From the IMG/VR virus record IMGVR_UViG_3300044641_009805, positions 186,001 through 250,000 of that record: a stretch of DNA of 64,000 bases. One strand, written 5' to 3'. The notes under the pieces are model-generated. The model made no database searches. It saw nothing but the letters and a program-made list of their open reading frames with translations, and had not been told where the DNA came from. Positions 29,527 to 47,416 of this stretch are shown here, one piece after another. Position numbers and translations under genes: made by a program. Numbering within the stretch: the first letter of the stretch is position 1; each line of letters starts with the position of its first letter.

Positions 29527-29534
29527 GTAGTAAT

Positions 29535-33526: not shown

Positions 33527-33552
33527 AATTTCTCAAAGCGGCAATGTATAAT
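33523..33552 (+). promoter_or_regulatory. Sigma70-like promoter TTGAAA-N18-TATAAT
   Basis: Near-consensus boxes. ATG 33560 lies 7 nt after the -10, with no SD, so a leaderless transcript is likely. Confidence 0.65.
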
Positions 33553-33559
33553 CAATTAC

Positions 33560-33985: not shown

Positions 33986-34749
33986 AGAAAGTTGAGTTTA
34001 AAGATGGACTTGCTATTAATGGCGATTCTTCTTCAAGAGATACAATTGAAGAAGTTAAAACGTGGCTAGGCGAAGCAGGAGGTGTACCTCTGATCGCAAC
34101 CGATCCTCCTTATGGTAACATAGTCATGCAGGAATGGGATCGAGTAAAAATGACTGACGACCAATACGCCGACCACATGATCCAATGGACACGATTGTGG
34201 TCGGAGATTCTACTTCAAGGAGGAGCATTCTATGTCTGGGGAGGTATTGGACTTCCTGATTTCCGTCCTTTCATCAAGTATCTCACGAGAGTTGAAGATG
34301 ATAACTTTAAGATGGCCAATCTCATTACCTGGTCAAAGAAGCGGGCATATGGAGTCCAAAACAACTATCTCTTTACGCGTGAAGAACTCGCATACTTCAT
34401 CAAGGGAAATCCAAAGAAACCCCTGAAGTTTAATATTCCCCTCCTCGAAACGAAGCGCGGATACGCTGGATATAATGAAAAGTATCCAGCCAAGAGTGAG
34501 TTCTTTCGTCGAACCAACGTTTGGATGGACATTAACGAGATTTTTAAGGGAAAACTTCACCCAACTCAAAAAGCTGCTCGTGTGGTAGAGATTCCTATAG
34601 AGGTCCATACAGATCCAGGAGATGTCGTCATTGACCCATTCGCGGGTAGTGGTGCTACTGCATTTGCCGCTCGCAAACTTGGTAGAAAATTTATTGTTAT
34701 CGAAAAAGATGAAGAGATCTTCGGTAAGATGATAGAGAGGTTACAATGA
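33982..34749 (+). CDS. Beta-class N6-adenine/N4-cytosine DNA methyltransferase
   Basis: Catalytic DPPY near the N-terminus, HPTQK, SAM-binding DPFAGSG near the C-terminus. Confidence 0.9.
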   Translation: MKKVEFKDGLAINGDSSSRDTIEEVKTWLGEAGGVPLIATDPPYGNIVMQEWDRVKMTDDQYADHMIQWTRLWSEILLQGGAFYVWGGIGLPDFRPFIKYLTRVEDDNFKMANLITWSKKRAYGVQNNYLFTREELAYFIKGNPKKPLKFNIPLLETKRGYAGYNEKYPAKSEFFRRTNVWMDINEIFKGKLHPTQKAARVVEIPIEVHTDPGDVVIDPFAGSGATAFAARKLGRKFIVIEKDEEIFGKMIERLQ

Positions 34750-34994
34750 AAAAACAGTTTAACTCGCAAAAAGAATATTGGGAATCTTTACTTAAAGAAT
34801 ATTCTAAGATCTATTTGAACGCCCAGGACAAGATTGCTAGATATGAGTCTGTAATGTCTAGAAAATCTTCTAAAAATTGGTCTGATGATAAAAAGAAAAA
34901 GTTTCTTAATAGGCTCACGACAGCAAACAAAGAACTTAATGAATCTTTTGACATCATTAATCAACTACAAATGAGATTAAATCAATCAGAATAA
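34746..34994 (+). CDS. Hypothetical protein
   Basis: 82-aa helical ORF, ATGA-coupled. Confidence 0.6.
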   Translation: MKKQFNSQKEYWESLLKEYSKIYLNAQDKIARYESVMSRKSSKNWSDDKKKKFLNRLTTANKELNESFDIINQLQMRLNQSE

Positions 34995-35020
34995 CACCAT
35001 CTTAATAAAAGAATTAAATT

Positions 35021-35854
35021 ATGAGATTGGCATGGGCGACTGATATACATTTAGATTGCGTTGATGATGTTGTTTCAAAGGTGCAAGATCTTGCTGTTCG
35101 AGGTGCTGAATGTGAGTCTTTCATATTGTCTGGTGATATCACCATAGCACCTCACTTGTTACAACACCTTAGAATCATAGAAAGCATCATACAAAAACCT
35201 TTTTATTTCGTACTTGGCAATCACGATTACTATTTTTCAGATATTCTTTCGGTTAGAAAGAGTGTGGCTGATGCATGTCGATCAATGTCATTCGCCAGAT
35301 ACTTGGCCATGACGCCTTACGTTAGATTGACTCCTCACGTCGCTTTAGTCGGTCATGATGGATGGTATGACGCGATGAATGGTAACTTCAGAGACAGTGA
35401 TGTTATCATGAATGATTGGATACGGATTGCAGATTTTTCTCCTGCAATCCTTCCTTCGTTGGGAGGTAAATCGATAAACAAAGATGTGATAATAAAAATT
35501 TCAAGAGCGATATGCAGCGCGTCTGTAAACCATATAGCAAATGGAATAAAGGCTGCCATTCGTGACAAAAATGAACACGTCATCGTTGTCTCGCACGTTC
35601 CTCCCTTTAAAGAATCCTACAATAGTACGAAGTACGGACCAACAAATTCTGCTTCAATTTTGCCGTGGTATACATCTAAAACCTTAGGTGATACGTTGCT
35701 ATCTGCAGCAAGAGCTTATCCACGTGTTAAGTTCACGATTTTATCGGGACACTCTCACAGTCATTATGATGAGTATTTGCTCAACAACTTGAACGTTCGC
35801 GTCGGAAATTCTCAATATGGTTCACCACAAATTGCAGGGATCATCGATATTTAA
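35021..35854 (+). CDS. Calcineurin-like metallophosphoesterase
   Basis: TDIHLD, SGDI, LGNHD, SHVPP, GHSH. Confidence 0.9.
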   Translation: MRLAWATDIHLDCVDDVVSKVQDLAVRGAECESFILSGDITIAPHLLQHLRIIESIIQKPFYFVLGNHDYYFSDILSVRKSVADACRSMSFARYLAMTPYVRLTPHVALVGHDGWYDAMNGNFRDSDVIMNDWIRIADFSPAILPSLGGKSINKDVIIKISRAICSASVNHIANGIKAAIRDKNEHVIVVSHVPPFKESYNSTKYGPTNSASILPWYTSKTLGDTLLSAARAYPRVKFTILSGHSHSHYDEYLLNNLNVRVGNSQYGSPQIAGIIDI

Positions 35855-35873
35855 AGTTAAAGGAGTTTCCTCC

Positions 35874-36404
35874 ATGAAAAGAGCGCTTCTCTTAAACTTT
35901 AATGGAGAACCTTTACAATTCATCGATGGTTCTAGGGCTATTAAGTTGATGTTAAAAGGTAGAGCTGAAGTTGCTTCTGGTATGACAGGAGAGCCTTGCT
36001 TTTGGGATGAGATTGTTAACTCTCCGACTCGAGGAATTCAACTGCCTGCAGTTTTAAGATTAAAGTATTACGTGAATAAGAGGCAGTATATTAAGCCACC
36101 TAGATTTCAAAAGAAAGTTTTATTCAATCGTGATGCTTGGAAATGTCAATACTGCGGCATTGAGCTCAACTATTCTGGCATAACGGTAGATCACATCTAC
36201 CCTGCGTCTCGAGGTGGCGCTACTACGTGGAAAAATTGCGTTGCAGCATGTCGTTACTGTAACAATAATAAAGGGAATAAGACGCCTGAAGAAGCTGGCA
36301 TGAAATTATTGAAAGTTCCCGTTGAACCAAACGCGCTTCATTATTGGGATCTTTCTAAGTCTACTTCATGGCATGATGACTGGTTTTTGTTCGTTGGCGC
36401 ATAA
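35874..36404 (+). CDS. HNH endonuclease (McrA-like)
   Basis: VFNRD..CQYCG, TVDHIYPASRGG.TTWKNCVAACRYCNNNKG. Confidence 0.92.
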   Translation: MKRALLLNFNGEPLQFIDGSRAIKLMLKGRAEVASGMTGEPCFWDEIVNSPTRGIQLPAVLRLKYYVNKRQYIKPPRFQKKVLFNRDAWKCQYCGIELNYSGITVDHIYPASRGGATTWKNCVAACRYCNNNKGNKTPEEAGMKLLKVPVEPNALHYWDLSKSTSWHDDWFLFVGA

Positions 36405-36478
36405 ATCTTTATATTCTATTTTCAACAATGATGTAATATCTTCTGTTGGATAATAGTTATGACAGGAGTTTTGCATTC

Positions 36479-37543
36479 ATGCGTTTGAAGATAACTGACT
36501 TACAACGTATCGTAGAAGAAACGGTACAAGAGAAAAAAGCAGTGGCAGAATTTTGTTCAGAGATAAAAAGAGTCTTTGGACCGACTGTGATTGTTGCAAA
36601 TGATGTGGTGGCTTTGTCTGAACAAGCCAACGATCGTTTGGATGTGCTAGAAAGAACTGGTAGAAGAAACTACATAAAGTTCTCTGCAAACGCAGCTCTC
36701 AAAGTAGCTCATCACAAGAATCCAGAAATCAGGAGATTGGCTATTAGATTGTTGCCAGAACATCTAGCATGCAAATTTATTAATGATAAGGTTCCTTTTG
36801 TTCGAGCCGCCGCCGCGCAAAACTCTCCCGTCAAGTTAATTGAAGAGACGATCAAAAAATATCCGACAGATGACACCCTACGTGATATCTTAAAACAAAA
36901 GCGTCTTACTGAGAGTAAGCCTGCTCTTAAGTCTGCTGCGTCAAGTCCTGAAGGAGAATCTTTCCTTAGCGACGCATGGTATGATTCAAAAGCCCGTAAA
37001 TTGATACAAGACTATGGTAGAACCCTGGACACAGGGTGGGTTTCTGCAGCGGTAAATCAATATTGTTCAGCCGCTAGATCCGTCAATCGCTACAACATAG
37101 ACTCTTATAAGCTCATGAAAAAAGTTGTAGAGATAATGGCTGACAACGAAGAAGAACGCAGAGACAAATTAGAGCTTAATGAATCGTTTAAACATGACGT
37201 TCAAGAATCAGATGAGCAGAATGATCAGGTAGAAAGCTTGTTAGAAACAGCTTCATTACCTAATGAATACATCACAAAAGCTCATGATGTTTTTTCTATG
37301 AAAATTACGAAGTTGGTTAAAGATGATGATCTCAATGAAGGTATAGCGGAATTTATTTCTGTTCCCTTATCAGGAATGTTACCTCATCAATCTTCTCCCA
37401 GATTTACGGATGAAATTGCTTTAGACACGTATGTGAAGCATTGGAACAATAAGCAAGCGCTTCAAGGAAGCAACTATAGACTTTCTTGGTCGCCACATCC
37501 AGAGATTCAAAATAAAGTCAAATTTTATCTGGGGTCAAAATGA
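36479..37543 (+). CDS. Hypothetical protein with N-terminal helix tag and HEAT-like segment
   Basis: MRLKITDLQRIVEE start; HKNPEIRRLAIRLLP...DKVPFVRAAAA. ATAGTTA at 36453. Confidence 0.75.
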   Translation: MRLKITDLQRIVEETVQEKKAVAEFCSEIKRVFGPTVIVANDVVALSEQANDRLDVLERTGRRNYIKFSANAALKVAHHKNPEIRRLAIRLLPEHLACKFINDKVPFVRAAAAQNSPVKLIEETIKKYPTDDTLRDILKQKRLTESKPALKSAASSPEGESFLSDAWYDSKARKLIQDYGRTLDTGWVSAAVNQYCSAARSVNRYNIDSYKLMKKVVEIMADNEEERRDKLELNESFKHDVQESDEQNDQVESLLETASLPNEYITKAHDVFSMKITKLVKDDDLNEGIAEFISVPLSGMLPHQSSPRFTDEIALDTYVKHWNNKQALQGSNYRLSWSPHPEIQNKVKFYLGSK

Positions 37544-38100
37544 GCAAGAAAAAAATTACCGAATCTTTACACATGATGTTGACGATCGAACCAAACTTAA
37601 ACATCATTACAGAAAATATGATGGCTGAGTGGGGAAATGTTCCTTATTGCCAGCTTTCTGTTGTTTTAGTTCATCTAAAATTTTTGGCAGAACTACACCA
37701 GAATCATCACTGGACTTGCATGGGAGATCCATTCTACGGCGATCATCTTCTTTTTCAACGATTGTATGAAGGCGTTTCTGCAGAAGTAGATTCAGTTGCT
37801 GAAAAAGCTATAGGTCTTGGATCAACTTCCAACGTCAATATTCAGCTGATTCATTCTCAAATGTTAAAGCTCATTTCTAACGTTGGATCAGGTATGACGA
37901 TTCCGCAATCGACTGATTTAGCAAAACGCTCAATGATTGCAGAGTTGAACTTTTTGAAAGTAATTGATCACGCGATGTCTTCTTTGAATGAGTGTGGAAT
38001 GTTGTCAAACGGTATCGATAATTTGTTACAAGGCATTGCAGACAAACATGAAGGACATGTTTATCTCTTAAAACAACGTTGTTCCAAACAGGCCGTTTAA
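37540..38100 (+). CDS. dps: Dps/ferritin-like protein
   Basis: HQNHHW..MG..FYGDHLLFQRLYE...DSVAEK ferroxidase pattern; KHEGHVYLLK. Confidence 0.78.
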   Translation: MSKKKITESLHMMLTIEPNLNIITENMMAEWGNVPYCQLSVVLVHLKFLAELHQNHHWTCMGDPFYGDHLLFQRLYEGVSAEVDSVAEKAIGLGSTSNVNIQLIHSQMLKLISNVGSGMTIPQSTDLAKRSMIAELNFLKVIDHAMSSLNECGMLSNGIDNLLQGIADKHEGHVYLLKQRCSKQAV

Positions 38101-38102
38101 AC

Positions 38103-38663
38103 ATGAAAATTAAATTTGAACAGTTAAGAAGAATCATAAAAGAAGAAATTACTCTTGCAAAATCAGGCGAAAATCAAAGATTTTTACATGGACCTGACGA
38201 TGAAGGTGCAATGGTAAAATCTAGTTTGTCAGCCATGATGAATATGGCTTCTGATATTCAAGATGTCATGGCAGACGATGATCAACTCCCGGGTTGGGTT
38301 CAAGATCATCTTTCTGTTGCTCATGAAAATCTGCAACAGGTTCATGGTTATTTGATGGGAACATTGAAGCAAGAATCTAGATCTAGTAATCAGAAAAAAA
38401 ATATTTCAGAGTCTATTTCTAAGATTACGACAAGAGAAATTAAAGAATGGTCGAAAGGCAATTGGGGATTCATTTCTGAGACATCTCAATCTGTTGACCC
38501 CGATCGAATTAGAGAAGTTTGGGAAGACCTAGGCGGGTACAATGGCTCTAAAGTTACAGTTGAAGATATAGCTTTAGAATTGAGAGTTCTTCCAACGGAT
38601 GTTAACATGAATGGAACAGGCCTTGTGGTTCTTGATGGTGTTGTACAAAGAGAGTCATTCTAA
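38103..38663 (+). CDS. Hypothetical protein with N-terminal helix tag
   Basis: MKIKFEQLRRIIKEE start; QLPGWVQDHLSVAHENLQQVHGYL. Confidence 0.75.
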   Translation: MKIKFEQLRRIIKEEITLAKSGENQRFLHGPDDEGAMVKSSLSAMMNMASDIQDVMADDDQLPGWVQDHLSVAHENLQQVHGYLMGTLKQESRSSNQKKNISESISKITTREIKEWSKGNWGFISETSQSVDPDRIREVWEDLGGYNGSKVTVEDIALELRVLPTDVNMNGTGLVVLDGVVQRESF

Positions 38664-38680
38664 CATTCTGGAATCGACGT

Positions 38681-39934
38681 ATGGGTGGTAATACTAAGGC
38701 TATAGATCGTGAGACTGGAGAAGTTGTAAACTTCTTTGGTCGTCCTGGGTATGCAGACAAAATAGATCTTAAAAAATTAGATCGCTCTTCTCTAAAAAGA
38801 TCTATCATTACTGCTTTAAAAAATTTGGATTCGTCGTATGAGAATGAATTTGGCGTTCCTATTTGGGATCGTTCGCAACGAAATTCATTACTCTCATCCG
38901 GTGAGGCGTTTAACGGATCTTCTGAACATCTATTCAACGATAAAATAACGGATAAAGAATTCACAAAATTTAAGCCTTCGGTAGGCGATATTGACTTGAC
39001 AGTTCCTGCTGAAAAAATAGAAACTATATTTGATCTACTAGCTTCTCTTGAAGGAAAAGAAGTGGTACCTGGGAAAATTTGGTATGTAGGACAAAATAGA
39101 AAAAAGTACGGAGGAGATCAAATAAATGCTTTGTTTGCGTACAGGCAAACAAAAGACGCAGACCCAGTATTCGTTCAAGTTGATTTTGAATCAGTAGACT
39201 ATGCTGGGGGGCGTCCGGATTCATTTGCGAAATTTGGACATTCTTCGGCTTGGGAAGACGTAAAAGAGGGCGTAAAAGGCGTGTTCCACAAATATTTGTT
39301 GAGATCTCTAACGACAAAATCAACTCTAAATGATGCAGTCATTCTTGCCAAGAATAGCCCAGTATACCCACCAGAAAAAATAAAGATTAAGAAGAAATCT
39401 GATCCAATTAAGCTGCTCTCGTTTTCTGTTTCGCAAGGGTTGAGAACCACTGTGGAGTTGCAGAAATACCCTGACGATCCTAATATTCCGAAAGAACTAA
39501 TCGGTCAACCTGTTAAATTAGGAGATTCTTTCGTTTATAGAGAACTATCAACAGCAGAATCAAGCTACGTAAAAAATATAGACGAAATATTTACGTTGTT
39601 GTTTGGTAAGGTTCCTTCGTCGTCAGATGACATGACAAAATTGCAATCTTTTTCTGGTATACTTTCGTTAATGAAAATGTATATGTCAGATGATGACATA
39701 GAAAATATCTACGAAGATTTTGTTAATGAAAAGCTATTTTCTCCTGAAGCTCAAGGATTAGATTTGACAAGTGCAGAAGTAGATAAATCTTCGAAGCTCG
39801 CCGCCGTAGGAAGATTTAGAAAAGAGTTTCCGTTTTTGGCAGAACCAGATGCGACCATGGTGCAATCTTATTATTCTTCGTATAAGATAAGAGAATCTAT
39901 ATCCAGGTATATACGCATCTTATTCGGTCGATAA
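38681..39934 (+). CDS. Pol-beta-superfamily nucleotidyltransferase-like protein
   Basis: MGGN start, GSS, GDIDL, third acidic residue in VQVDF. Confidence 0.65.
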   Translation: MGGNTKAIDRETGEVVNFFGRPGYADKIDLKKLDRSSLKRSIITALKNLDSSYENEFGVPIWDRSQRNSLLSSGEAFNGSSEHLFNDKITDKEFTKFKPSVGDIDLTVPAEKIETIFDLLASLEGKEVVPGKIWYVGQNRKKYGGDQINALFAYRQTKDADPVFVQVDFESVDYAGGRPDSFAKFGHSSAWEDVKEGVKGVFHKYLLRSLTTKSTLNDAVILAKNSPVYPPEKIKIKKKSDPIKLLSFSVSQGLRTTVELQKYPDDPNIPKELIGQPVKLGDSFVYRELSTAESSYVKNIDEIFTLLFGKVPSSSDDMTKLQSFSGILSLMKMYMSDDDIENIYEDFVNEKLFSPEAQGLDLTSAEVDKSSKLAAVGRFRKEFPFLAEPDATMVQSYYSSYKIRESISRYIRILFGR

Positions 39935-41620
39935 ATGTTAGATATTTCAATTCTAGAACTAAAAAAAGCAGTCAAGACTCCGAAGGCTGCCTCTAATTTT
40001 ATCAGAAAGCATATCAAGGTTGTCGAGAAAATCGACGGAACGAAACTTACCTTGATACGCAATGATGCGCAATTTGACCCAAATGACTATACAAAAAACT
40101 GGATTATTTCGTATAAGGGAAACATCATTTATTCTACGGAATTTTCTGGATTGGAAAAGAGAGATAAAGACATTAAAACGTCTGGGCTAGGTACGTCTCA
40201 ATATAAATTTGTGTATGATCATTTGAAAAGAGTCCATGAAGGAACTGCTTCAATTCCTCTCAATACAGAATTTTTTATAGAATTTGTTCAAAATAAACCT
40301 ACTGTAACTAGAGATTATGCGAAGAAACACGGCATGTTCTTGGTCGGATTTGGGCCGGCAGTGTATGCATCATCTAAAGGGCAAATCTATTCTTCATCCA
40401 CATTTGTTGATGATCCTGCTAAGTTAGAAGAGTACAGAGAAATATTACAGTTAAATTCTTTTCCATTACTCTACGAAGGTAATTTGTCTTCTAGGACGGA
40501 GATATTCGATAATAGCGAATATCTTGATCCAAGGCTTAGAGAATTATTCTCACAGAATCTAGAGACAGTGGATTTTTCAAATCCGCAAGAGATTCTTGAC
40601 GGAGTTGTTAGTTCTTTTCAAGCTTTGGAGTCCTCGTTAGGAGGACAATCAGAAGGAGTTGTCATCACCGTCGAAGGTGATGACATGTCTGAGAAGCAGC
40701 TATATAAAGTTTTAGCAGCCGATCAACACAACAAAGAAGTAAGAGAGAAAAAGAAATCTAGGTATAAGGGCACCCCGCAAGAAGAAGCAGCGTATTGGGA
40801 AGACATCAACGCTACTACTGATCTAATTCTGGACGAATTGCAGATTGATGCTAGGGATTCTCGACCTGAAGAAGCGTTGAAAGACTTGTCGGCAAGAGTT
40901 TATGAGATGTCTGAAGAAGACATAGGAGCATATCATCCTGTTAAAACTCTTTTAAATAAGCAAGAAGATTTAATGCTGACTGCTAAAACCAGATTGTTCG
41001 TTTTAGGTCATAGACTCAAAAAGATAGCTGTCATTCCTATGGCTGCAAAACCTTTTCACAGAGGTCATCAAGCGTTATTGGATGCAGCAGAAGCAGACGG
41101 AAATGAATTAATTCTAGTGTATGTATCTACGGGGGGAAGAGACGAAATAAGTTCTTCTGACATGGTCCCGTTGTGGAAAAACTACTACTTGCCAGCCATA
41201 CAAGAGACGTATGGAGATAAGGTCGCCATCAGGTTCACAAAAGGAATTTCTCCCATGTATGAACTGAGATCTGCAATCTCCAACCTAGTCAGACAATCAG
41301 AAGAAACAGTAGTGACTCTTTATGGAGATCCAGAAGATGCTGCCCGCCGCGTCGACGATATAATCAATAACGAAAAAAACGTGGTTGATCTAACGAGAAA
41401 AGTCGTGGCAGGATCGGTACCCAGAGAATCTTCCGGCGGAATTTCTGGCACAAAAATGAGAGAATTTTTGTCGACTGGACAAAGAGAACAGTTCATGAAG
41501 AATTTGCCTGATTTTTTGAACGAAGATTCAAAACTAGCAATTTGGAATTCTTTGTCAAAAAGTAAAGTTTCGCAAAGTGAAAATCTATTGAAATCATATG
41601 TAAGATTAATTCTTGCATAA
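39935..41620 (+). CDS. Fusion of ATP-dependent ligase-type nucleotidyltransferase domain and HxGH (cytidylyl/adenylyl)transferase domain
   Basis: N-terminal EKIDG (motif I), FFIEF (III), EGVVI (IV), LYKV (V). C-terminal KPFHRGH and ISGTKMR. Confidence 0.75.
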   Translation: MLDISILELKKAVKTPKAASNFIRKHIKVVEKIDGTKLTLIRNDAQFDPNDYTKNWIISYKGNIIYSTEFSGLEKRDKDIKTSGLGTSQYKFVYDHLKRVHEGTASIPLNTEFFIEFVQNKPTVTRDYAKKHGMFLVGFGPAVYASSKGQIYSSSTFVDDPAKLEEYREILQLNSFPLLYEGNLSSRTEIFDNSEYLDPRLRELFSQNLETVDFSNPQEILDGVVSSFQALESSLGGQSEGVVITVEGDDMSEKQLYKVLAADQHNKEVREKKKSRYKGTPQEEAAYWEDINATTDLILDELQIDARDSRPEEALKDLSARVYEMSEEDIGAYHPVKTLLNKQEDLMLTAKTRLFVLGHRLKKIAVIPMAAKPFHRGHQALLDAAEADGNELILVYVSTGGRDEISSSDMVPLWKNYYLPAIQETYGDKVAIRFTKGISPMYELRSAISNLVRQSEETVVTLYGDPEDAARRVDDIINNEKNVVDLTRKVVAGSVPRESSGGISGTKMREFLSTGQREQFMKNLPDFLNEDSKLAIWNSLSKSKVSQSENLLKSYVRLILA

Positions 41621-42177
41621 TGAGAATTTTTTTTAGTTCTGACACTCACTACTTTCATGCGAACATCATAAAATATTGTGATAGACCTTTTAAAACTGTC
41701 GATGAAATGAATGAATTCATGATAGACGCGTGGAATTCATTCGTAGATGAAGATGATTTAACTTTTCATCTTGGCGATTTTTCGTTGTTGCGTCCCGTGG
41801 ACTCCGATCAACTAAGAGATGTAATAACCAGATTAAAAGGTAAGAAAATTCTCGTTAAAGGTAACCATGACAAAGATAGTGACTCGTTTTTTTTAGATGC
41901 AGGGTTTAAAAAAGTATACGATTCTATCAACGTAGCAGGCGTTTTGCTTGTCCATTATCCGTTGCACGAAGCTTTTTCTAGAAAAGTAAAAGATTCTCAT
42001 TGGGGTGAAGTGTCTCACGTAATACATGGACATTCACACGATAAAAAAAATCCTAATCTAGAAAATCATTACAATGTAGCCGTAGACAGGCATGAATTTT
42101 GTCCTGTTTCTTTGCAACAAGCAGTTCCTGAAAATTTGCAAAAGAATTTCTTTTTAGAAGCAGTTAAGCTTTTTTGA
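41620..42177 (+). CDS. Calcineurin-like phosphoesterase
   Basis: SDTHYFH, HLGDF, KGNHD, HYP, HGHSH. TAATG-coupled to the upstream gene. Confidence 0.9.
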   Translation: MRIFFSSDTHYFHANIIKYCDRPFKTVDEMNEFMIDAWNSFVDEDDLTFHLGDFSLLRPVDSDQLRDVITRLKGKKILVKGNHDKDSDSFFLDAGFKKVYDSINVAGVLLVHYPLHEAFSRKVKDSHWGEVSHVIHGHSHDKKNPNLENHYNVAVDRHEFCPVSLQQAVPENLQKNFFLEAVKLF

Positions 42178-42203
42178 ACAAAGTAAAAAAGTTTTCATAA
42201 TAT
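42174..42203 (+). promoter_or_regulatory. Sigma70-like promoter TTGAAC-N18-TAATAT for guaB
   Basis: Same geometry as the other TTGAAN promoters. Confidence 0.45.
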
Positions 42204-42218
42204 ATCGTATGAAATAAT

Positions 42219-43286
42219 ATGCAACGTTCATTGTGCTTCGATGATGTACTGCTCGTCCCTCAACTTTCAGACATAGAGTCTAGATCGCATGTAGATCTTT
42301 CAGTGCCGGGATTTGACTCCGCTTTTGCTAGCTTAACCGACAAACACGAACAATTAAAGTGTCCCATTGTCGGTTCTCCTATGGACACAGTAATAAGTCC
42401 TCAGTCGGCGGCTGTCATTGCAAAGCTTGGAGGCTTCGGAGTTTTGCATCGATACTGTTCAATCGATGATTCTAAAAAGATGTTTCTTGAAACGGCTAAA
42501 CTATTGCTTGATGATTGTGACAATAGTTCTTCAGCTTTTATCCCGAACTTGATGGTGGCTGTTGGTGCGACGGGTGATTATCTTGAAAGAGCAGGTGAAC
42601 TATACGACGTGGGTTGTAGGGCTTTCTGCGTTGATGTTGCGCATGGTCACCACACAAATGTTAAAAATGCTCTAAATAAGCTAAGAGTAAAATTTGGTAA
42701 AAAAATTCACATAATGACTGGCAACGTTGCAACTTTGGAAGCCTTCAATGATCTTGCTGACTGGGGTGCTGATTCCATACGTACCGGTGTCGGAGGAGGA
42801 TCCATGTGTACAACGAGAATTCGCACGGGACATGGAGTTCCAACGCTGCAATCAATCATCGATTGTGCAAAATCCGACAGGGACGTTTACATTGTAGCAG
42901 ATGGTGGAATTAGGAACAGCGGCGATGCAGTGAAAGCTCTAGCTGCTGGAGCGGACATGGTGATGCTAGGATCAGTTCTTGCTGGACATGATGAATCCCC
43001 AGGAGCAATCATTACAAAAGACAACCAACGTTACAAGAAGTTTCGCGGAATGGCTTCAAGAGAAGCGCAATTGGAATGGAGAGGTAAGGTGTCCGTTGCT
43101 GAAGGAGAGTCAACGTTGATCCCTTACAGAGGTTCTCTTCAAGATACTTTGACAGACCTGCTTGAAGGCATTAAATCAGGTCTGTCATATTCAGGCGCTA
43201 AAAGTATTAGAGAGTTTAGAAGCAAAGCTAAATTTTTAGGTATCACTTCAAATGCTGTCAAAGAAAATGGTCCTCACGGAAAGTGA
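42219..43286 (+). CDS. guaB: IMP dehydrogenase / GMP reductase (no CBS subdomain)
   Basis: [57 protein letters not shown]. Confidence 0.92.
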
Positions 43287-43288
43287 TT

Positions 43289-43759
43289 TCACTTTTTCTT
43301 TTTCTTCTTTTTTCCGTGAAATGGAACGCCTGCTTGCTTTGACATCCAATTTGCTGCGGCCCAAGGATTCGTAGCCCAACTATCAACTTTTTTTGCTTTT
43401 TCTGTTGCGGTTACTGCGCCTTTCAATATTTTTTTTGCTGTTGATTTAGAAGGTCCTTTTTTTGCTTCTGTCATTGCACATGTGCATGGCCCTTCTAACT
43501 CTAAAGGCATCATACCGCACATAGGGCAAACTGAAGCTTGTTCGCATGAACATTGATCGGCAGGCATTCCACACATTCCACACATTTCAGATTCCATTCC
43601 ACCGCAACCACAATCTGACTCGACTGATTGCGACATCATGCCACACTCTTCGCATGGCATTCCTGCTTCTCTTGTGTCCATCACACCCGTTGGTGCGTTA
43701 CCTGCGTAACTTCCTATGGGTTCTCCAAATGTTTCTGCTAGATAGTCTTTTGCTCTCAT
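43289..43759 (-). CDS. Cys-rich protein with three CxxC-GM...CxC units and poly-Lys tail
   Basis: 12 Cys in alternating CxxC/CxC pairs. ATATTTA lies 5 nt upstream of ATG 43759 on the minus strand. Confidence 0.7.
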   Translation of the reverse strand: MRAKDYLAETFGEPIGSYAGNAPTGVMDTREAGMPCEECGMMSQSVESDCGCGGMESEMCGMCGMPADQCSCEQASVCPMCGMMPLELEGPCTCAMTEAKKGPSKSTAKKILKGAVTATEKAKKVDSWATNPWAAANWMSKQAGVPFHGKKKKKKK

Positions 43760-43789
43760 GTCGATAAATATACCTTCTTCCAAGAAATA

Positions 43790-43819
43790 TTGAAGTGCAA
43801 ATTTAAACTTCTTTAACAT
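43790..43819 (+). promoter_or_regulatory. Sigma70-like promoter TTGAAG-N18-TAACAT for dnaE
   Basis: -35 at 43790-95, -10 at 43814-19, ATG at 43832. Confidence 0.45.
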
Positions 43820-43831
43820 ACAATAGTTCTG

Positions 43832-46800
43832 ATGACGAGAGACAATAAAACAGCTTCACCTACCAGATTCGTGGGTCTTCATGCGCATTCTACATTTTCG
43901 CAGTACGATGGTCTCGATTATCCTCAAGAGCACATTGATTACGTGCTAGAAAATGGCATGGACGCTTGGTCGTTGACTGACCATGGTAACATGAATGGAT
44001 TCTGTCACGCTTTTCTTCATGCCGAAAAGATGAAAAAGTCAGGAAAGAACTTTAAGTTTATCCCTGGCTGCGAGATGTACGTTCATCCTGATCTTACCCA
44101 GTGGAAAAAAGATCTGGAAGCGTCCAAGGTAAAACCTGCAAAGGACGAGTCCATCATTACTCCTATCACCGCGGTCGTTGATGGCGATGACGAGACGACA
44201 GACGTTGGTACGGATGAAGCAGCTTTGACTGTTGAGAACGAGGACGAGACGAAGTCAGGTAAATACAATGATCCCGTCAAGCGTCGTCATCATCTAGTCG
44301 TTCTACCAAAAACCTCAGTAGGCCTTCAACGTCTGTTCCACCTGGTATCCAGGGGATACATGGAAGGATTTTATCGATTCCCTCGAATCGATTATTCGAT
44401 GCTAAAAGAAGCAGCAAAAGGTGATCATCTCATGATCAGCACAGCTTGTTTAGGTGGTCCTTTGGCTTTCGACGCTTTCGAACAGCTTCAAAAAGTTCCG
44501 TTCGAAGAATTGAAACACCAATTGCTTAACGACAGATCACTTTTGGATCGTATCATTGCTACGATGAGTAACACTTACGACAAGTTAGTTGATGCCGTCG
44601 GTCGCGATAACGTATGTCTTGAACTACAATTCAACAAGCTCCCTGCTCAGCATCTTGTTAATCGAGCTCTCATTGAGTTTTCCAAACGAAATTCCCTGCG
44701 CGATAGAGTGGTGGTTACTTGCGACTCGCACTATTCACGACCAGAAAACTGGAAAGAACGAGAGATTTATAAGAAGCTAGGTTGGCTTAACTATCAAAAC
44801 TTTGATCCAAGCTTGTTGCCTAAGTCTAAGGACGATTTAAAATGCGAATTGTATCCCAAAAATGCCAAGCAGGTGTGGGAATCTTATTTGTCTACGACGG
44901 AAGGCATGGATTTCTATGACGATGAATTTGTTAAGGACGCGATTGAAAGAACCCATGATATCGTTCATAACGAATTAGGTGACATTCAGCCTGACAAGAC
45001 AATGAAGCTTCCTTCTTACGTGATCCCTGAGGGAACCACGGAAGATAAGGCACTCGTGGTTGCGTGTAAAAATGGATTGAAGTGGAGAGGTCTAGACTCA
45101 AGACAAGACTACATCGACAGAATCAAATATGAGCTAGGCATCATCAAAGGTAAGAAGTTCTCTAGGTACTTCTTGACGATGAAGGCTATCATGGATATTG
45201 CTCGTGAGCATATGTTGATCGGACCAGGTCGTGGATCAGCTGCTGGTTCACTTGTAGCCTATGTTCTTGGAATTACGAATTTGGATCCAATTGAATATGA
45301 TCTTTCTTTTGAAAGATTTTTGAATCCTTCTAGAACAGGTGCCCCTGATATTGACTCTGACATCTCTGATCGAGATTTATTGATTGAACTTCTTAGAAAG
45401 AATCTTGGCGAAAGGAACGTCATTCCTATCTCCAACTACAACACCTTCAGGTTAAAGAGCCTCATTAAAGATATTGCTCGATTCTACAGTATCCCTTTTG
45501 AGGAAGTCAACGCTGCTCTTGCTCCTGTCGAGGATGATGTCAAGAAGGAGGTCTTTAAACCAGGAACAGACAAGAACTTGTTCGTTCTTACATACGAAGA
45601 CGCCATCAAATATTCAAAGTCTCTACAAGACTTCATTGCTGCACACCCCGAGGTGGCCGAACCAATTGAGATTTTATTCAAGCAAAACCGTTCTTTGGGC
45701 CGCCACGCCGGTGGCGTCATCGTATCAGAAGATGTCGCCGAAAGAATGCCTCTAATCCTTGCTCGCGGTGAGGCCCAGACACCTTGGGTCGAAGGCATGA
45801 ACTATAAACATCTCGAAGAATTTGGGTGGATCAAGTTCGATCTGCTAGGTCTTGAAACCTTGCGTATCATCGAACGATGCATCGGCCTAATCCTCGAGCG
45901 CCGGGAAGGTGTAAAAAATCCTGATTTTAAGCAAATTCGAGCGTGGTTTGATAAGCATATGGATCCGAAGAACATTGATCTGAACGATCAAAAAGTCTAC
46001 GAATATGTTTACCACGAAGGTAGGTTCGCAGGTATCTTCCAGCTAACACAAACAGGTGCTCAGCGGCTGTTTACGAAGGCTAAACCACGTAGCATCATCG
46101 ACATTGCCACTCTTACTTCGATCTATCGTCCTGGTCCTCTTGCGGCTAACGTGGATAAACTTTATATTGATGCAAAGAATAATCCTGACAAGATTGATTA
46201 TCAACATCCGTTGATCAAAAAAGTCCTCGAGTCTACATACGGTTGTATCATCTTTCAAGAGCAGACCATGAGGTTATGTTCTGTGGTGGCGGGATTCCCT
46301 GAGGCTGAGACTGACACCATCCGTCGTAACATTATGAAGCGCAGCGCGTCTAAGAAAGACGATGCTGCAGCGGATGCGAGGAAAGCAAAAGAAGAGTTCG
46401 TGTTAGGTGCTGTGAAGAATGGCGTAAACGAGAAGGTCGCATCTGAACTATACGATAAGATTCTATTCTTCTCTGGATACGGCTTTAATGCCTCGCATGC
46501 CGTGTCTTATGCAATTGATTCTTACTATTGCGCTTGGCTCTTGACTTATTATGAAGAGGAATGGCTATGCGCATATCTCGAATCGATGTCAGGAAACGAC
46601 GAGAAACGAGCCAAAGCTTTTTCAGAAGTAAAAGCGCTAGGATATAAGATCGTTCCAATTGACGTAAACTACGCGACAAAGAGCTGGACAATCTTGGAAG
46701 GTAAACGATTCATGCCAAGCTTCTTGTCTTGCAAGGGAATTGGAGAGGCTGCTATCGATGAAATCGTCGAGAACAGACCTTACAAGAGTGTCGAAGAGAT

Positions 46801-47416
46801 GTTGTGGAATGATGATGGTTCATGGAAACATTCCAAATTTAACAAGCGAGCTTTTGAAGGTCTCATCTCCATCAGAGCGTTTGACTCTCTTGACTGCGTA
46901 GGTGAAGGAAAAACATTTAACAGCTACAAACAGATGCATCACATCTTGATTGATAAAGGTGCCGATATCAAGAAAACTTCAAAGAAAAATCCTACTCTCG
47001 GTATGGAAAACTTTCGAAATCTTTTGATAGAAACAAATGACATGGATGAGTGGACTCGTGGGGAGTTGGTTGACAACAGCGTGAAATATCTTGGATCATT
47101 CAACTCTAACATTTTAGTTTCTCAAGAACTGATTGCAAAGCTAGAATCTAAAGGTGTCAAATCCATCGACCTCATCGAGCAAACTGACGTTTATTGGTTC
47201 ATTATTTCTGACGTAAAAGAAAAAAAGACGAAGAACGGAAAGCCATACTTGCTTCTGACGGCAATAGGCCTTGAAGGCCAAACCCGTCGGATCTTTTGTT
47301 GGGGATGGGATGGCCGAACTGAGTTGCCGAAGTACTCCACATGCATAGCAGAAATTACTGTCGATAATTACGGTAATAAAACTTTTATGAGCAAGGTTAA
47401 GGTAATCGATGAATAA
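43832..47416 (+). CDS. dnaE: DNA polymerase III alpha subunit (family C)
   Basis: PHP domain HAHS.FS..DG, TDHG, GCE, DSHY; GPGRGSAAGSLV, PDIDSD, RHAGG, KFDLLGL, FQEQ, YGFNASHA. No intein. Confidence 0.96.
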   Translation: MTRDNKTASPTRFVGLHAHSTFSQYDGLDYPQEHIDYVLENGMDAWSLTDHGNMNGFCHAFLHAEKMKKSGKNFKFIPGCEMYVHPDLTQWKKDLEASKVKPAKDESIITPITAVVDGDDETTDVGTDEAALTVENEDETKSGKYNDPVKRRHHLVVLPKTSVGLQRLFHLVSRGYMEGFYRFPRIDYSMLKEAAKGDHLMISTACLGGPLAFDAFEQLQKVPFEELKHQLLNDRSLLDRIIATMSNTYDKLVDAVGRDNVCLELQFNKLPAQHLVNRALIEFSKRNSLRDRVVVTCDSHYSRPENWKEREIYKKLGWLNYQNFDPSLLPKSKDDLKCELYPKNAKQVWESYLSTTEGMDFYDDEFVKDAIERTHDIVHNELGDIQPDKTMKLPSYVIPEGTTEDKALVVACKNGLKWRGLDSRQDYIDRIKYELGIIKGKKFSRYFLTMKAIMDIAREHMLIGPGRGSAAGSLVAYVLGITNLDPIEYDLSFERFLNPSRTGAPDIDSDISDRDLLIELLRKNLGERNVIPISNYNTFRLKSLIKDIARFYSIPFEEVNAALAPVEDDVKKEVFKPGTDKNLFVLTYEDAIKYSKSLQDFIAAHPEVAEPIEILFKQNRSLGRHAGGVIVSEDVAERMPLILARGEAQTPWVEGMNYKHLEEFGWIKFDLLGLETLRIIERCIGLILERREGVKNPDFKQIRAWFDKHMDPKNIDLNDQKVYEYVYHEGRFAGIFQLTQTGAQRLFTKAKPRSIIDIATLTSIYRPGPLAANVDKLYIDAKNNPDKIDYQHPLIKKVLESTYGCIIFQEQTMRLCSVVAGFPEAETDTIRRNIMKRSASKKDDAAADARKAKEEFVLGAVKNGVNEKVASELYDKILFFSGYGFNASHAVSYAIDSYYCAWLLTYYEEEWLCAYLESMSGNDEKRAKAFSEVKALGYKIVPIDVNYATKSWTILEGKRFMPSFLSCKGIGEAAIDEIVENRPYKSVEEMLWNDDGSWKHSKFNKRAFEGLISIRAFDSLDCVGEGKTFNSYKQMHHILIDKGADIKKTSKKNPTLGMENFRNLLIETNDMDEWTRGELVDNSVKYLGSFNSNILVSQELIAKLESKGVKSIDLIEQTDVYWFIISDVKEKKTKNGKPYLLLTAIGLEGQTRRIFCWGWDGRTELPKYSTCIAEITVDNYGNKTFMSKVKVIDE

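What the first reader, a model, noticed from the sequence alone, without database searches (positions are those of the whole stretch)
38681..42177. Three different nucleotidyltransferase folds plus a phosphoesterase in one coupled module
Seen: (i) a Pol-beta-type NTase (GS..GDID..D); (ii) a ligase/capping-type domain with motifs I (KIDG), III, IV (EGVVI) and V, fused to (iii) an HxGH transferase (KPFHRGH, ISGTKMR); (iv) a calcineurin-like phosphoesterase. The ORFs abut or overlap (39934/39935; TAATG at 41620), and the first two end in the helix tag. Established: phosphoesterase plus ligase plus NTase is the logic of RNA end-healing/sealing systems (T4 Pnk/Rnl, Pnkp-Hen1), and HxGH enzymes include NMNAT. 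Inference: this may be an uncharacterised counter-defence module, for tRNA/RNA repair, NAD restoration, or making or destroying a nucleotide signal, perhaps injected from the virion.
Basis: partly seen in the sequence, partly recalled or inferred. Interest (0 to 1): 0.72.

Follow-up and report, generated by a model that had tools for sequence, protein, structure and literature searches.

The report
Phage three-enzyme nucleic-acid break-repair module
Three abutting genes of a 278-kb phage encode a polymerase-X-like nucleotide-adding enzyme, an RNA-ligase fused to an NMN-adenylyltransferase-like enzyme, and a metal phosphatase; the first two are always inherited together (often fused into one protein) in hundreds of phage lineages and most likely form an uncharacterised kit for mending broken RNA or DNA ends, which in some related phages is packed into the virus particle.

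Summary
In detail: ORF1 (38681-39934), ORF2 (39935-41620) and ORF3 (41620-42177) abut or overlap. High-confidence models show three nucleotidyltransferase folds: Pol-beta/family-X-like; Rnl2-like ligase; NMNAT/PPAT-like HxGH. ORF3 is a complete calcineurin-type phosphoesterase.

All catalytic residues are conserved in about 175-180 homologs.

ORF1 and ORF2 form the conserved core:
- 48 of 54 dereplicated loci have them adjacent or fused.
- Four more genomes carry both genes unlinked.
- The two contigs without ORF1 are fragments.
- Fusions occur in both orders, with HxGH alone, and with a P-loop (AAA_33) kinase.

ORF3 is a generic phage phosphoesterase, linked in only 10 of 54 loci.

Best model: a polynucleotide end-healing, fill-in and sealing kit. 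RNA is favoured, because the ligase has no OB domain and the genome has a separate DNA ligase. DNA repair is not excluded. The role of the HxGH domain is unknown.

Virion delivery has outside support. Both homologs were detected in Campylobacter phage IBB_35 particles, and some homologs carry a T4-type capsid-targeting leader. It is not shown for the window's own proteins.

Neither family has a described function. Verdict: a new variant of a known kind.

The parts
38681..39934 (+). ORF1, 417 aa. A Pol-beta-superfamily nucleotidyltransferase with a family-X-polymerase-like palm plus thumb (about aa 22-325) and a C-terminal helical domain. Catalytic residues: G79-S80, D103, D105, D168.
   Evidence: ORF. 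No Pfam hit; matches phrog_19290, unknown function. AF2 pLDDT 94. Best folds are Pol beta, lambda, mu, TdT and ASFV PolX, Z 6.9-7.8 over about 165-190 residues. Catalytic residues are 100% conserved in 179 homologs. The family has 764 clusters at 50% identity.
39890..39931 (+).
   Evidence: Helix 407-415 with low pLDDT. Conserved in many homologs and similar to the ORF2 tail in the same genomes. Not matched by the N-terminal leader profile.
39935..40744 (+). ORF2 aa 1-270: covalent nucleotidyltransferase (ligase) domain of RNA-ligase type. The predicted AMP-lysine is K32 (codon 40028-40030).
   Evidence: Pfam RNA_ligase PF09414 at 20 bits, below the cut-off of 27. Best folds are NgrRnl (Z 10.5), T4 Rnl2 (10.3), REL1 (9.8) and Trl1-LIG. 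K32, E116, E240, G241 and K258 are conserved in 173-174 of 174 homologs. The nearest Atlas clusters are viral RNA_ligase and T4_Rnl2_C families.
40745..41005 (+). ORF2 aa 271-357: all-helical region where DNA ligases and capping enzymes carry an OB fold.
   Evidence: Secondary structure of the model. Partly aligned with the C-terminal helical domains of Trl1-LIG and Rnl3-type ligases.
41006..41578 (+). ORF2 aa 358-548: HIGH-superfamily (HxGH) nucleotidyltransferase domain, NMNAT/PPAT-like. Motifs: H375-x-G-H378 and S504-G-T-x-x-R509.
   Evidence: Best folds are NadM NMNAT (Z 13.1), PPAT (12.4) and M. jannaschii NMNAT (12.1). The profile against PDB sequences aligns both motifs with archaeal and NadR-type NMNAT, E about 1e-4. 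Matches phrog_3041 cytidyltransferase. Conservation.
41579..41617 (+). C-terminal amphipathic helix of ORF2 (aa 549-561).
   Evidence: Helix 551-560 with low pLDDT. The motif E-N-L-L-+-x-Y-V-R-x-L-L is conserved down to about 35% identity.
41620..42177 (+). ORF3, 185 aa: calcineurin-like metallophosphoesterase of the aq_1665 / phrog_547 type. Its start overlaps the ORF2 stop by one base.
   Evidence: Pfam Metallophos_2 at 37 bits, above the cut-off. phrog_547 at 1e-41. PDB 1xm7 at E 9e-25. All metal-binding motifs are invariant. Adjacent to the ORF1/ORF2 pair in 10 of 54 dereplicated loci.
36446..38663 (+). Upstream neighbours, for context only. Two ORFs (36446-37543 and 38079-38663) begin with the genome's recurrent N-terminal leader. 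A Dps/ferritin-like ORF (37540-38100) lies between them.
   Evidence: They are not shown to belong to the module.

Best explanation
**What it is.** ORF1 plus ORF2, with ORF3 as a lineage-specific accessory, form a conserved phage enzyme kit that acts on broken polynucleotide ends.

**Working model.**
1. ORF3 is a binuclear metallophosphoesterase. It removes a 2',3'-cyclic or 3'-phosphate to expose a 3'-OH.
2. ORF1 has a family-X-polymerase-like Pol-beta fold. It adds back one or a few nucleotides to that 3'-OH.
3. The N-terminal domain of ORF2 self-adenylylates on K32 with ATP. It then transfers AMP to the 5'-phosphate and seals the break.
4. The C-terminal HxGH domain of ORF2 performs a coupled adenylyl transfer onto a phosphate monoester. 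The acceptor is unknown. It could be NMN, giving NAD+, or a phosphorylated polynucleotide end.
5. In relatives, a P-loop kinase supplies the 5'-phosphate.

RNA is the favoured substrate, for example tRNA cut by host anticodon nucleases. The ligase is of the RNA-ligase type without an OB domain, and the phage has a separate canonical DNA ligase.

In other lineages the enzymes are capsid-targeted, so the kit is probably delivered with the DNA there.

**Shown:** the folds, the active-site conservation, the co-inheritance and fusions, the virion detection of homologs, and the CTS-like leaders.

**Inferred:** the substrate, the order of the steps, the role of the HxGH domain, and delivery of the window's own proteins.
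For: Folds and motifs.

Active sites are conserved in 174-179 homologs.

Coupling of ORF1 and ORF2:
- 48 of 54 dereplicated ORF2 loci have ORF1 adjacent or fused.
- About 20 loci encode one lig-HxGH-ORF1 polypeptide of 954-1350 aa.
- Other fusions are ORF1-lig-HxGH, HxGH-ORF1, kinase-ORF1 and ORF1-kinase.
- 15 Campylobacter and 6 Vibrio phage records appear in the hit lists of both genes; in CP220 the two genes lie 66 kb apart.
- Of five contigs without an adjacent ORF1, three have it elsewhere; the other two are 27% and 35% complete.

Kinase: an AAA_33/Zeta-type P-loop kinase lies between the two genes in L007 and is fused to ORF1 in L070.

RNA-type ligase: all-helical after the NTase domain, no OB fold. 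Best hits are RNA ligases. The genome has its own OB-containing ATP DNA ligase and 14 tRNA genes.

Precedent: phage RNA ligases that work with Pol-beta NTases (RlaP), kinases and calcineurin-like phosphatases (PMC7824862). RlaP adds 1-2 NMP to damaged RNA 3' ends (bioRxiv 10.64898/2025.12.29.696909).

Virion link: the IBB_35 particle proteome lists gene 1-56 (ORF1 homolog, 17% coverage) and gene 2-25 (ORF2 homolog, 2.9% coverage). T4-type CTS-like leaders sit on ORF1, ORF2 and kinase homologs (the T4 CTS sequence is).
Against: - No biochemical evidence exists for any member.
- The window's genome (84% complete) has no AAA_33 kinase, RtcB, KptA, RlaP or class II CCA enzyme. A complete heal-and-seal pathway for 5'-OH/2',3'>P ends is therefore not encoded here.
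- ORF1's nearest folds are DNA polymerases of family X, with only moderate Z (below 8).
- The RNA_ligase Pfam match is below the curated cut-off.
- No described repair system contains a HIGH-type nucleotidyltransferase, so one of the three active sites has no place in the model.
- ORF3 belongs to a generic phage family and is absent from most loci.
- In this genome the module sits among replication, recombination and nucleotide-metabolism genes. That would suit DNA repair equally well.
Confidence: 0.5

Rival explanations
1. A DNA gap-filling and nick-sealing (or DNA-end processing) kit. ORF1 would act as a minimal family X polymerase like ASFV PolX. The ORF2 ligase would seal, possibly after a ribonucleotide patch as in bacterial LigD. 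ORF3 would clean 3'-phosphate ends. In capsid-targeted lineages the kit would protect or repair the incoming genome, for example after restriction or nicking.
For: - The top structural matches of ORF1 are all family X DNA polymerases: Pol beta, lambda, mu, TdT, ASFV PolX and Thermus PolX. About 165-190 residues align across palm and thumb.
- ORF3's best NCBIfam hit is the ligase-associated DNA-damage-response phosphoesterase PdeM. The hit is weak (E 5e-4).
- The module lies among UvsX, DnaB, exonuclease, RNR and Pol III alpha genes.
- In L005/L006 an ATP DNA ligase follows ORF3.
- Homologs are virion-borne or CTS-tagged, so they travel with the DNA.
Against: - The ligase domain lacks the OB fold that all DNA ligases carry, and it matches RNA ligases best.
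- The phage already has a canonical DNA ligase.
- ORF1 has no detectable 8-kDa/HhH DNA-binding domain and no Pfam match to the PolX palm or thumb families.
- The Z-scores are middling.
Confidence: 0.22
2. An NAD+- or nucleotide-centred counter-defence device. The HxGH domain would be an NMNAT that rebuilds NAD+, the relatives' kinase acting as a ribosylnicotinamide kinase as in NadR. ORF1 and the ligase domain would make or modify a nucleotide or cap-like molecule, and ORF3 would hydrolyse a signalling nucleotide.
For: - The HxGH motifs align with archaeal and NadR/NadM-type NMNAT, and the best fold hits are NMNATs.
- HIGH-NTase-kinase fusions of the NadR type are known in jumbo phages (PMC7824862).
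- HxGH-ORF1 fusions without the ligase exist.
Against: - The genome has no Nampt/NadV. An NMNAT alone cannot restore NAD+ after NADase cleavage to ADPR and nicotinamide.
- PPAT scores as well as NMNAT.
- The ligase lysine and motifs I-V are invariant, which argues for a polynucleotide ligase rather than a small-molecule enzyme.
- ORF1 resembles polymerases more than cGAS/CD-NTases.
Confidence: 0.1
3. The genes are merely neighbours with independent functions, and the 'module' is an accident of tight phage gene packing.
For: - Phage genes routinely abut or overlap.
- ORF3 is generic and variably linked.
- The predicted-complex job gave no verdict.
Against: - Repeated independent fusions of ORF1 with ORF2 occur in both orders, and with parts of it.
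- Co-occurrence holds even when the genes are 20-120 kb apart.
Confidence: 0.03

Closest known systems
Phage and bacterial RNA end-healing/sealing systems: T4 Pnkp + Rnl1/Rnl2; bacterial Pnkp-Hen1 and Pnkp1-Rnl-Hen1; RlaP + RNA ligase cassettes
   Same: - A ligase of the covalent-lysine NTase type.
- A Pol-beta NTase partner, as RlaP is for RNA ligases.
- A metallophosphoesterase, as in the phosphatase module of Clostridium thermocellum Pnkp.
- A P-loop kinase in relatives.
- Operon or fusion linkage.
   Different: - ORF1 is not RlaP: there is no PF10127 match, and its fold is nearer to family X polymerases.
- The ligase is fused to a HIGH-type nucleotidyltransferase, which none of these systems has.
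- There is no Hen1.
- The window's genome has no kinase.
- Some lineages target the enzymes to the capsid.
T4 Rnl2 / Naegleria NgrRnl / kinetoplastid REL1 (nick-sealing RNA ligases)
   Same: The adenylyltransferase fold gives the best matches (Z about 10). Motifs I, III, IV and V are present. There is no OB domain, and a helical region follows the NTase domain. REL1 works with a Pol-beta TUTase (RET2) in the editosome, which is analogous to the ORF1/ORF2 pairing.
   Different: - Identity is only 13-17%.
- Motif I is KIDG rather than the KxHG I recall for Rnl2 (from memory).
- Motif V has a single invariant lysine.
- The Pfam score is below the cut-off.
- No T4_Rnl2_C domain was detected.
Family X DNA polymerases, especially the minimal ASFV PolX (paired with a viral ligase for repair)
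   Same: A palm with GS and DxD...D, plus a following thumb-like subdomain. 163 of the 176 residues of the ASFV PolX chain align (rmsd 3.5 A). A virus-encoded partner ligase is present.
   Different: There is no sequence-level match and no 8-kDa or HhH domains. ORF1 has an extra C-terminal helical domain and an invariant N-terminal GGN motif. Z is only 6.9-7.8.
Archaeal/NadR/NadM-type NMN adenylyltransferases and PPAT (HIGH superfamily)
   Same: A Rossmann-like fold (Z 11-13). The 'P-x-H-x-G-H' and 'S-G-T-x-x-R' motifs align residue for residue with M. jannaschii NMNAT.
   Different: E-values are only about 1e-4 and substrate-specific residues are unassigned. The domain is fused to a ligase. 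The genome has no Nampt partner.
T4 internal proteins and Alt: diverse injected proteins that share only an N-terminal capsid-targeting sequence
   Same: - Some ORF1, ORF2 and kinase homologs start with MK(S/T)F.QF..E, close to the T4 CTS MKTYQEFIAE.
- Homologs were found in IBB_35 particles.
- The gene pair often sits between the major capsid and neck genes, or next to terminase and portal.
   Different: The window's ORF1 and ORF2 have no N-terminal leader, only a C-terminal helix. This genome's own recurrent leader has a different sequence and has not been tested.

Membership tests
Pol-beta nucleotidyltransferase superfamily (ORF1) | hG[GS] motif, [DE]h[DE]h metal carboxylates and a third acidic residue on the palm sheet. 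| tested here: met
   G79-S80, D103-x-D105 and D168 are 177-179 of 179 conserved. The palm fold matches PolX, TUTase, OAS and cGLR.
Family X DNA polymerase (ORF1) | Palm plus thumb (nascent-base-pair-binding) subdomains with PolX topology. | tested here: inconclusive
   The top seven VIA hits and the Foldseek, AFDB and PDB hits are PolX enzymes with 163-191 aligned residues. Z is only 6.8-7.8 and TM is below 0.45.
Family X DNA polymerase (ORF1) | Sequence-profile match to the PolX palm/thumb/fingers families; HhH or 8-kDa DNA-binding domains. | tested here: not met
   No Pfam family at E <= 0.1. No helix-hairpin-helix or 8-kDa region aligned.
RlaP (PF10127, RNA-ligase-associated Pol-beta NTase) (ORF1) | Match to the PF10127 profile. 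| tested here: not met
   No hit in hmmscan or in the six-frame search of the whole genome.
RlaP (PF10127) (ORF1) | Genomic association with an RNA ligase. | tested here: met
   Adjacent to or fused with the ORF2 ligase in 48 of 54 loci. This is a functional analogy only.
Covalent nucleotidyltransferases: ATP-dependent ligases and capping enzymes (ORF2 N-terminal domain) | Motif I KxDG lysine, plus motifs III, IV and V. | tested here: met
   K32-I-D-G, E112/E116, E240-G241 and K258 are invariant in 173-174 of 174.
RNA ligase, Rnl2-like / PF09414 (ORF2 N-terminal domain) | Profile match above the curated threshold. | tested here: inconclusive
   20 bits against a cut-off of 27. Several homologs do carry PF09414. 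The nearest Atlas clusters are PF09414 +/- T4_Rnl2_C.
RNA ligase rather than DNA ligase or capping enzyme (ORF2) | No OB-fold domain after the NTase domain; a helical C-terminal module instead. | tested here: met
   Residues 267-357 are all helical in the model. The best fold matches are RNA ligases.
RNA ligase (ORF2) | Lysine adenylylation and sealing of RNA 3'-OH/5'-P ends. | not testable with these tools
   Needs biochemistry.
HIGH-superfamily nucleotidyltransferase (ORF2 C-terminal domain) | (H/T)xGH motif and ISxxxxR motif on a Rossmann-like fold. | tested here: met
   H375 (H in 153, T in 16 of 174), G377, H378 in 173 of 174, S504-G-T and R509 in 167 of 174. Fold Z 11-13.
NMN adenylyltransferase specifically | Substrate-specific recognition of NMN; NAD+ synthesis. 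| tested here: inconclusive
   Both motifs align with archaeal and NadR NMNAT at E about 1e-4, but PPAT scores equally well. No Nampt in the genome.
Calcineurin-like metallophosphoesterase (ORF3) | DxH, GD, GNH[DE], H and GHxH metal-binding motifs, with a profile match above the threshold. | tested here: met
   All motifs are invariant. Metallophos_2 at 37.2 bits against 27. PDB 1xm7 at E 9e-25.
Complete end-healing/sealing pathway (Pnkp/Rnl type) | A polynucleotide 5'-kinase component. | tested here: not met
   No AAA_33 kinase in the window's genome. One is present in relatives L007 and L070 and in P0043 and P0101.
T4-type capsid-targeted (injected) proteins | An N-terminal CTS-like leader of about 10 aa before the mature domain. 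| tested here: not met
   The window's ORF1 starts directly at the core MGGN and ORF2 at MLDISI. The leader is present in 11 of 252 ORF1-family and 2 of 120 ORF2-family representatives, and across the L007 gene block.

The most novel reading that the evidence does not exclude
The ORF1/ORF2 enzymes (with kinase or phosphoesterase partners) are a previously unrecognised class of encapsidated, co-injected enzymes. The three-active-site polynucleotide repair or end-capping machine would be loaded into the head through short targeting helices: a T4-type CTS in some lineages, and the MKIxLxELR+IIREE leader or C-terminal helix in this one. It would be delivered with the genome to undo host nuclease damage to tRNA, or to the incoming DNA ends, from the first seconds of infection. 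The HxGH domain would carry out a new adenylyl transfer onto a polynucleotide phosphate end.
Probability: 0.25. Interest if true: 0.85.

Novelty: new variant of a known kind. Interest (0 to 1): 0.66.

Why it matters
- Phage RNA-repair enzymes (T4 Pnkp, Rnl1, Rnl2) are classic tools and classic counter-defence factors. The natural role of Rnl2-type ligases is still unclear.
- Here an Rnl2-like ligase is locked by co-inheritance and fusion to a PolX-like nucleotide-adding enzyme and to a HIGH-type adenylyltransferase. The ORF1 family alone has 764 clusters at 50% identity. None of it is characterised: the PHROG entries for ORF1 (phrog_19290) and for the ligase part of ORF2 (phrog_27149) read 'unknown function'.
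- The system offers a defined, testable multi-enzyme set with three different nucleotidyl-transfer chemistries.
- It is a possible source of new ligase and terminal-transferase reagents.
- If the virion link holds, it would be the first case of a nucleic-acid repair kit delivered by injection.

Tried and rejected
1. Complex prediction on ORF2 + ORF1 gave no verdict (score 0.00). This is not evidence for or against binding.

2. Link to the downstream GMP reductase (42219-43286) and to deoxyinosine DNA of Firehammerviruses (the dI idea is from memory). This was rejected. GMP-reductase homologs occur in 79 phage records but not in Campylobacter phages, and relatives have other genes at that position.

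3. ORF1 = CP220 gp027 'virion structural protein', or pv27 CDS0283. No similarity was found. The true homologs are pv27 CDS0276 and CP220 84842-85894.

4. ORF1 = RlaP, or = a class II CCA-adding enzyme. There are no profile matches.

5. NAD salvage partner search: no Nampt and no KptA/Tpt1.

6. Other RNA ligases: no RtcB. The second PF09414 hit in the genome is a canonical DNA ligase.

7. Promoter and terminator scan: nothing above shuffled expectation.

8. Extra domains of long homologs gave no informative Pfam, PHROG or PDB matches. These were the P0241 insert, the extensions of P0289, P0290, P0297 and P0340, and the 336-aa and 250-aa proteins of L007. By motif inspection only, the P0241 insert looks like a second Pol-beta NTase, but BLAST to ORF1 is not significant.

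9. Literature searches found no description of an RNA-ligase-HIGH-NTase fusion or of the ORF1 family.

10. PIP-box-like reading of the C-terminal helices (ExxLxxY[VI]): an idea only, untested.

Full report
**Setting.** The window is positions 186001-250000 of a 278,435-bp IMG/VR virus contig, estimated 84% complete. The region around the finding is a long run of + strand genes. They include UvsX-like recombinase, DnaB-like helicase, an exonuclease, class I RNR, an HNH endonuclease, a second metallophosphoesterase, a GMP-reductase/IMPDH-like protein and a Pol III alpha subunit. The genome also carries 14 tRNA genes and a canonical ATP-dependent DNA ligase with an OB domain.

**Observation.** The three ORFs exist as described.
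- The ORF1 stop codon (39932-39934) is immediately followed by the ORF2 start codon.
- The ORF2 stop and the ORF3 start overlap in TAATG.
- No promoter or terminator signal exceeds shuffled expectation.

**ORF1 (417 aa).**
- It has no Pfam or NCBIfam family and belongs to phrog_19290, 'unknown function'.
- An alignment of 54 homologs gives invariant G79-S80, G102-D103-x-D105 and D168, plus K199, H203-K204 and an N-terminal G-G-N.
- The AlphaFold2 model is confident: pLDDT 94.4, pTM 0.90.
- Foldseek against the PDB returns almost only DNA polymerases lambda and beta, at E about 1e-3.
- The Foldseek-independent VIA search puts Pol beta, TdT, Pol mu, ASFV PolX, Thermus PolX and Leishmania Pol beta on top. 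Z is 6.8-7.8, with 163-191 residues aligned across palm and thumb.
- cGLR, OAS, TUTases and MenT follow, matching the palm only.
- AFDB clusters give the same picture. BFVD gives uncharacterised phage proteins.
- The Z-scores are middling, so I call ORF1 a Pol-beta-superfamily NTase with a PolX-like two-subdomain core, not a member of family X.

**ORF2 (561 aa).**
- Pfam gives sub-threshold RNA_ligase (aa 28-259) and citrate-lyase-ligase/cytidylyltransferase matches (aa 364-409). PHROGs gives phrog_27149 (unknown) plus phrog_3041 'cytidyltransferase'.
- The model (pLDDT 91.2) has three parts.
  - N-terminal adenylyltransferase domain. Its best matches are Naegleria NgrRnl (Z 10.5), T4 Rnl2 (10.3), REL1 (9.8), Trl1-LIG (8.5-8.6) and Rnl3-type ligases.
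  - An all-helical stretch (aa 267-357) in place of the OB fold.
  - A Rossmann-like domain (aa 361-545). Its best matches are NadM NMNAT (13.1), PPAT (12.4), M. jannaschii NMNAT (12.1) and NaMNATs.
- A profile search of PDB sequences aligns 'PxHxGH' and 'SGTxxR' with archaeal and NadR NMNAT motifs. E is only about 1e-4, and PPAT scores equally well.
- Language-model neighbours of the N-terminal part are viral RNA_ligase/T4_Rnl2_C clusters. Those of the C-terminal part are stand-alone viral cytidylyltransferase-like proteins.

**ORF3 (185 aa).** It is a complete calcineurin-type metallophosphoesterase.
- Pfam is above threshold, and phrog_547 scores 1e-41.
- The closest solved relative is the uncharacterised Aquifex aq_1665, at E 9e-25.
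- All metal ligands are invariant.
- Its family occurs in 1248 phage records, far beyond the range of ORF1 and ORF2.

**Conservation of active sites.**
- ORF1 family, 179 homologs: G79, D103, D105 and D168 are 100% conserved; S80 is 177 of 179.
- ORF2 family, 174 homologs: K32, D34 and G35 are 173 of 174; E116, E240, G241 and K258 are 174 of 174.
- HxGH domain: H375 is H (153) or T (16); H378 is 173 of 174; R509 is 167 of 174.

All three nucleotidyl-transfer sites are therefore under selection.

**Co-conservation.** This was the second criterion.
- 15 Campylobacter (Firehammervirus) and 6 Vibrio phage records appear in the hit lists of both ORF1 and ORF2. In CP220 the two genes are 66 kb apart.
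- A scan of IMG/VR gave 79 loci. After dereplication at 85% identity there were 54 lineages.
  - 48 have ORF1 within 8 kb of ORF2 or fused to it.
  - Of five contigs without a nearby ORF1, three have it elsewhere on the contig. The other two are 27% and 35% complete.
- About 20 lineages encode a single ligase-HxGH-ORF1 polypeptide of 954-1350 aa (example P0241).
- Among the 150 best representatives of the ORF1 family there are also these fusions:
  - ORF1-ligase-HxGH: P0294, P0299, P0347.
  - HxGH-ORF1 without a ligase domain: P0366, P0372, P0361.
  - kinase-ORF1: P0043.
  - ORF1-kinase: P0101.
- In L007 a P-loop kinase (AAA_33, E 9e-8; also Zeta-toxin-like) lies between the two genes. The same kinase is fused to ORF1 in L070.
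- ORF3 homologs flank the pair in only 10 of 54 lineages.

The conserved core is thus ORF1 + ORF2. Kinase and phosphoesterase are exchangeable accessories.

**Mechanistic reading.**
- A lysine-adenylylating ligase, a 3'-end nucleotide-adding enzyme, a phosphoesterase and (in relatives) a P-loop kinase together make up a polynucleotide end-healing, fill-in and sealing system.
- Published comparative work describes phage RNA ligases that operate with RlaP Pol-beta NTases, polynucleotide kinases and, in some jumbo phages, calcineurin-like phosphatases (PMC7824862).
- RlaP was recently shown to add one or two NMPs to damaged RNA 3' ends.
- ORF1 is not RlaP by profile but occupies the same niche.
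- I favour RNA as substrate. The ligase has the RNA-ligase architecture, and the phage has a separate DNA ligase.
- The PolX-like fold of ORF1, the weak PdeM-like hit of ORF3 and the replication/recombination neighbourhood keep a DNA-repair reading alive.
- The window's genome lacks an AAA_33 kinase, RtcB, KptA and Nampt. Here the kit would therefore need 5'-phosphate ends or a host kinase.
- An NAD-salvage role for the HxGH domain lacks its usual partner.
- The HxGH domain has no counterpart in any described repair system. HIGH enzymes adenylylate phosphate monoesters or carboxylates (established family chemistry). Transfer onto a polynucleotide phosphate end is conceivable, but it is pure inference.

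**Virion link.** Several independent observations point the same way.
- In many lineages the pair lies between the major capsid protein gene and the neck/sheath genes, or next to terminase and portal.
- The particle proteome of Campylobacter phage vB_CcoM-IBB_35 lists gene 1-56 at 17.0% coverage and gene 2-25 at 2.9% coverage among 38 virion proteins (PMC3322345). By coordinates these are the ORF1 homolog and the ligase part of the ORF2 homolog.
- The T4 capsid-targeting sequence is MKTYQEFIAE. It is cleaved once and is sufficient to package foreign proteins (see also PMC3012670).
- Eleven ORF1-family and two ORF2-family representatives begin with a near-identical leader placed before the core domain, for example MKTFNQFITE and MKSFKQYLNE.
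- In L007 the whole co-directional block carries such a leader. The block comprises the ORF1 homolog, a 336-aa protein, the kinase, a 250-aa protein, the ORF2 homolog and several small downstream proteins.
- The window's own ORF1 and ORF2 have no N-terminal leader.

**The genome's own leader and the C-terminal helices.**
- The window's genome has a different recurrent N-terminal leader, MKIxLxELR+IIREE. It occurs on at least 14 proteins against 0.08 expected by chance. Two of these are the ORFs just upstream of ORF1.
- ORF1 and ORF2 end in conserved amphipathic helices that co-vary between the two families within a genome.
- The leader profile does not hit the window's C-termini.
- It does hit the corresponding position of the L069 ORF1 homolog.
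- The L033 ORF2 homolog is fused to a protein that starts with the leader.
- Whether these helices are targeting signals is untested.

**Novelty and verdict.**
- I found no description of the ORF1 family, of a ligase-HIGH-NTase fusion, or of capsid-targeted repair enzymes in the searchable literature.
- The kind of system, phage polynucleotide repair, is known. This composition and its possible mode of delivery are not.
- I therefore rate it a new variant of a known kind.
- That the module is real is near certain. My confidence in the repair function is about 0.5 for the stated model, with about 0.2 more on the DNA variant.

Noticed in passing
window 29511-29798, 32368-32889, 36446-37543, 38079-38663; genome-wide also 2504-2959, 33237-48278 (a cluster) and 255027-255518 in G000 coordinates: At least 14 otherwise unrelated proteins share an N-terminal leader, MKIxL(S/G)(E/D)LR+IIREE, against 0.08 expected by chance. 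The same leader occurs in relatives (L008-L011, L070, L085, L022). It recalls the T4 internal proteins, which share only a capsid-targeting sequence.
   Followed up: partly
L007:2474-12723 (ENA metagenome contig of 158,937 bp): A block of about ten co-directional genes all start with a T4-CTS-like leader, MKSF(K/L)(Q/E)(Y/F)..E. They include the ORF1 and ORF2 homologs and an AAA_33 kinase. This suggests a whole set of encapsidated enzymes.
   Followed up: partly
L043:10004-13924 (P0241) and similar proteins of about 1300 aa in L041, L045, L046, L049-L054 and L057-L064: The long ligase-HxGH-ORF1 fusions carry an extra insert of about 350 aa (residues 548-903). Its GS...GDIDIQ...QVDLV motifs look like a second, very divergent Pol-beta NTase. 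No database match was found.
   Followed up: partly
L033:9992-12952 (P0242): This ORF2 homolog is extended by about 400 aa. The extension begins with the helix leader (MRISERQLRAIVNEEL) and continues into a Gly/Ala-rich, strongly hydrophobic region. It could be a gene fusion or a lost stop codon.
   Followed up: no
window 42219-43286: A GMP reductase / IMPDH-like gene (PF00478, 1.8e-92) lies directly downstream of ORF3. Homologs are scattered in 79 phage records, mostly jumbo phages. It is not co-distributed with ORF1/ORF2.
   Followed up: partly
window 43289-43819, minus strand: A 176-aa ORF on the opposite strand is very rich in Cys and Met, with CGMC/CPMCGM-type repeats, and ends in a run of eight lysines. 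It may be a metal-binding protein.
   Followed up: no
window 35021-35854 and 35817-36404: A second, larger calcineurin-like phosphoesterase (277 aa, phrog_1649) is followed by an overlapping HNH endonuclease ORF, about 3 kb upstream of the module.
   Followed up: partly
window 37540-38100: A Dps/ferritin-like 'DNA binding protein' ORF (phrog_3636, 2e-11) sits between the two leader-bearing ORFs upstream of ORF1.
   Followed up: no
G000:C1:52059-53806, 62143-62217, 82717-82789; G000:C1:81045-82382: The genome has a tRNA array of 12 genes plus two singletons, including Lys-UUU, Glu-UUC, Gln, Asn, Tyr and Arg. It also has a canonical ATP-dependent DNA ligase with an OB domain, just upstream of tRNA-Glu.
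   Followed up: partly
HM246721.1 24270-25289 and 23855-24148 (L092): In phage IBB_35 the ORF2 homolog is annotated as two ORFs (gene 2-25 and gene 2-24), whereas CP220 has one 503-aa gene. It is probably a frameshift in the 454 assembly, or a genuinely split gene.
   Followed up: no
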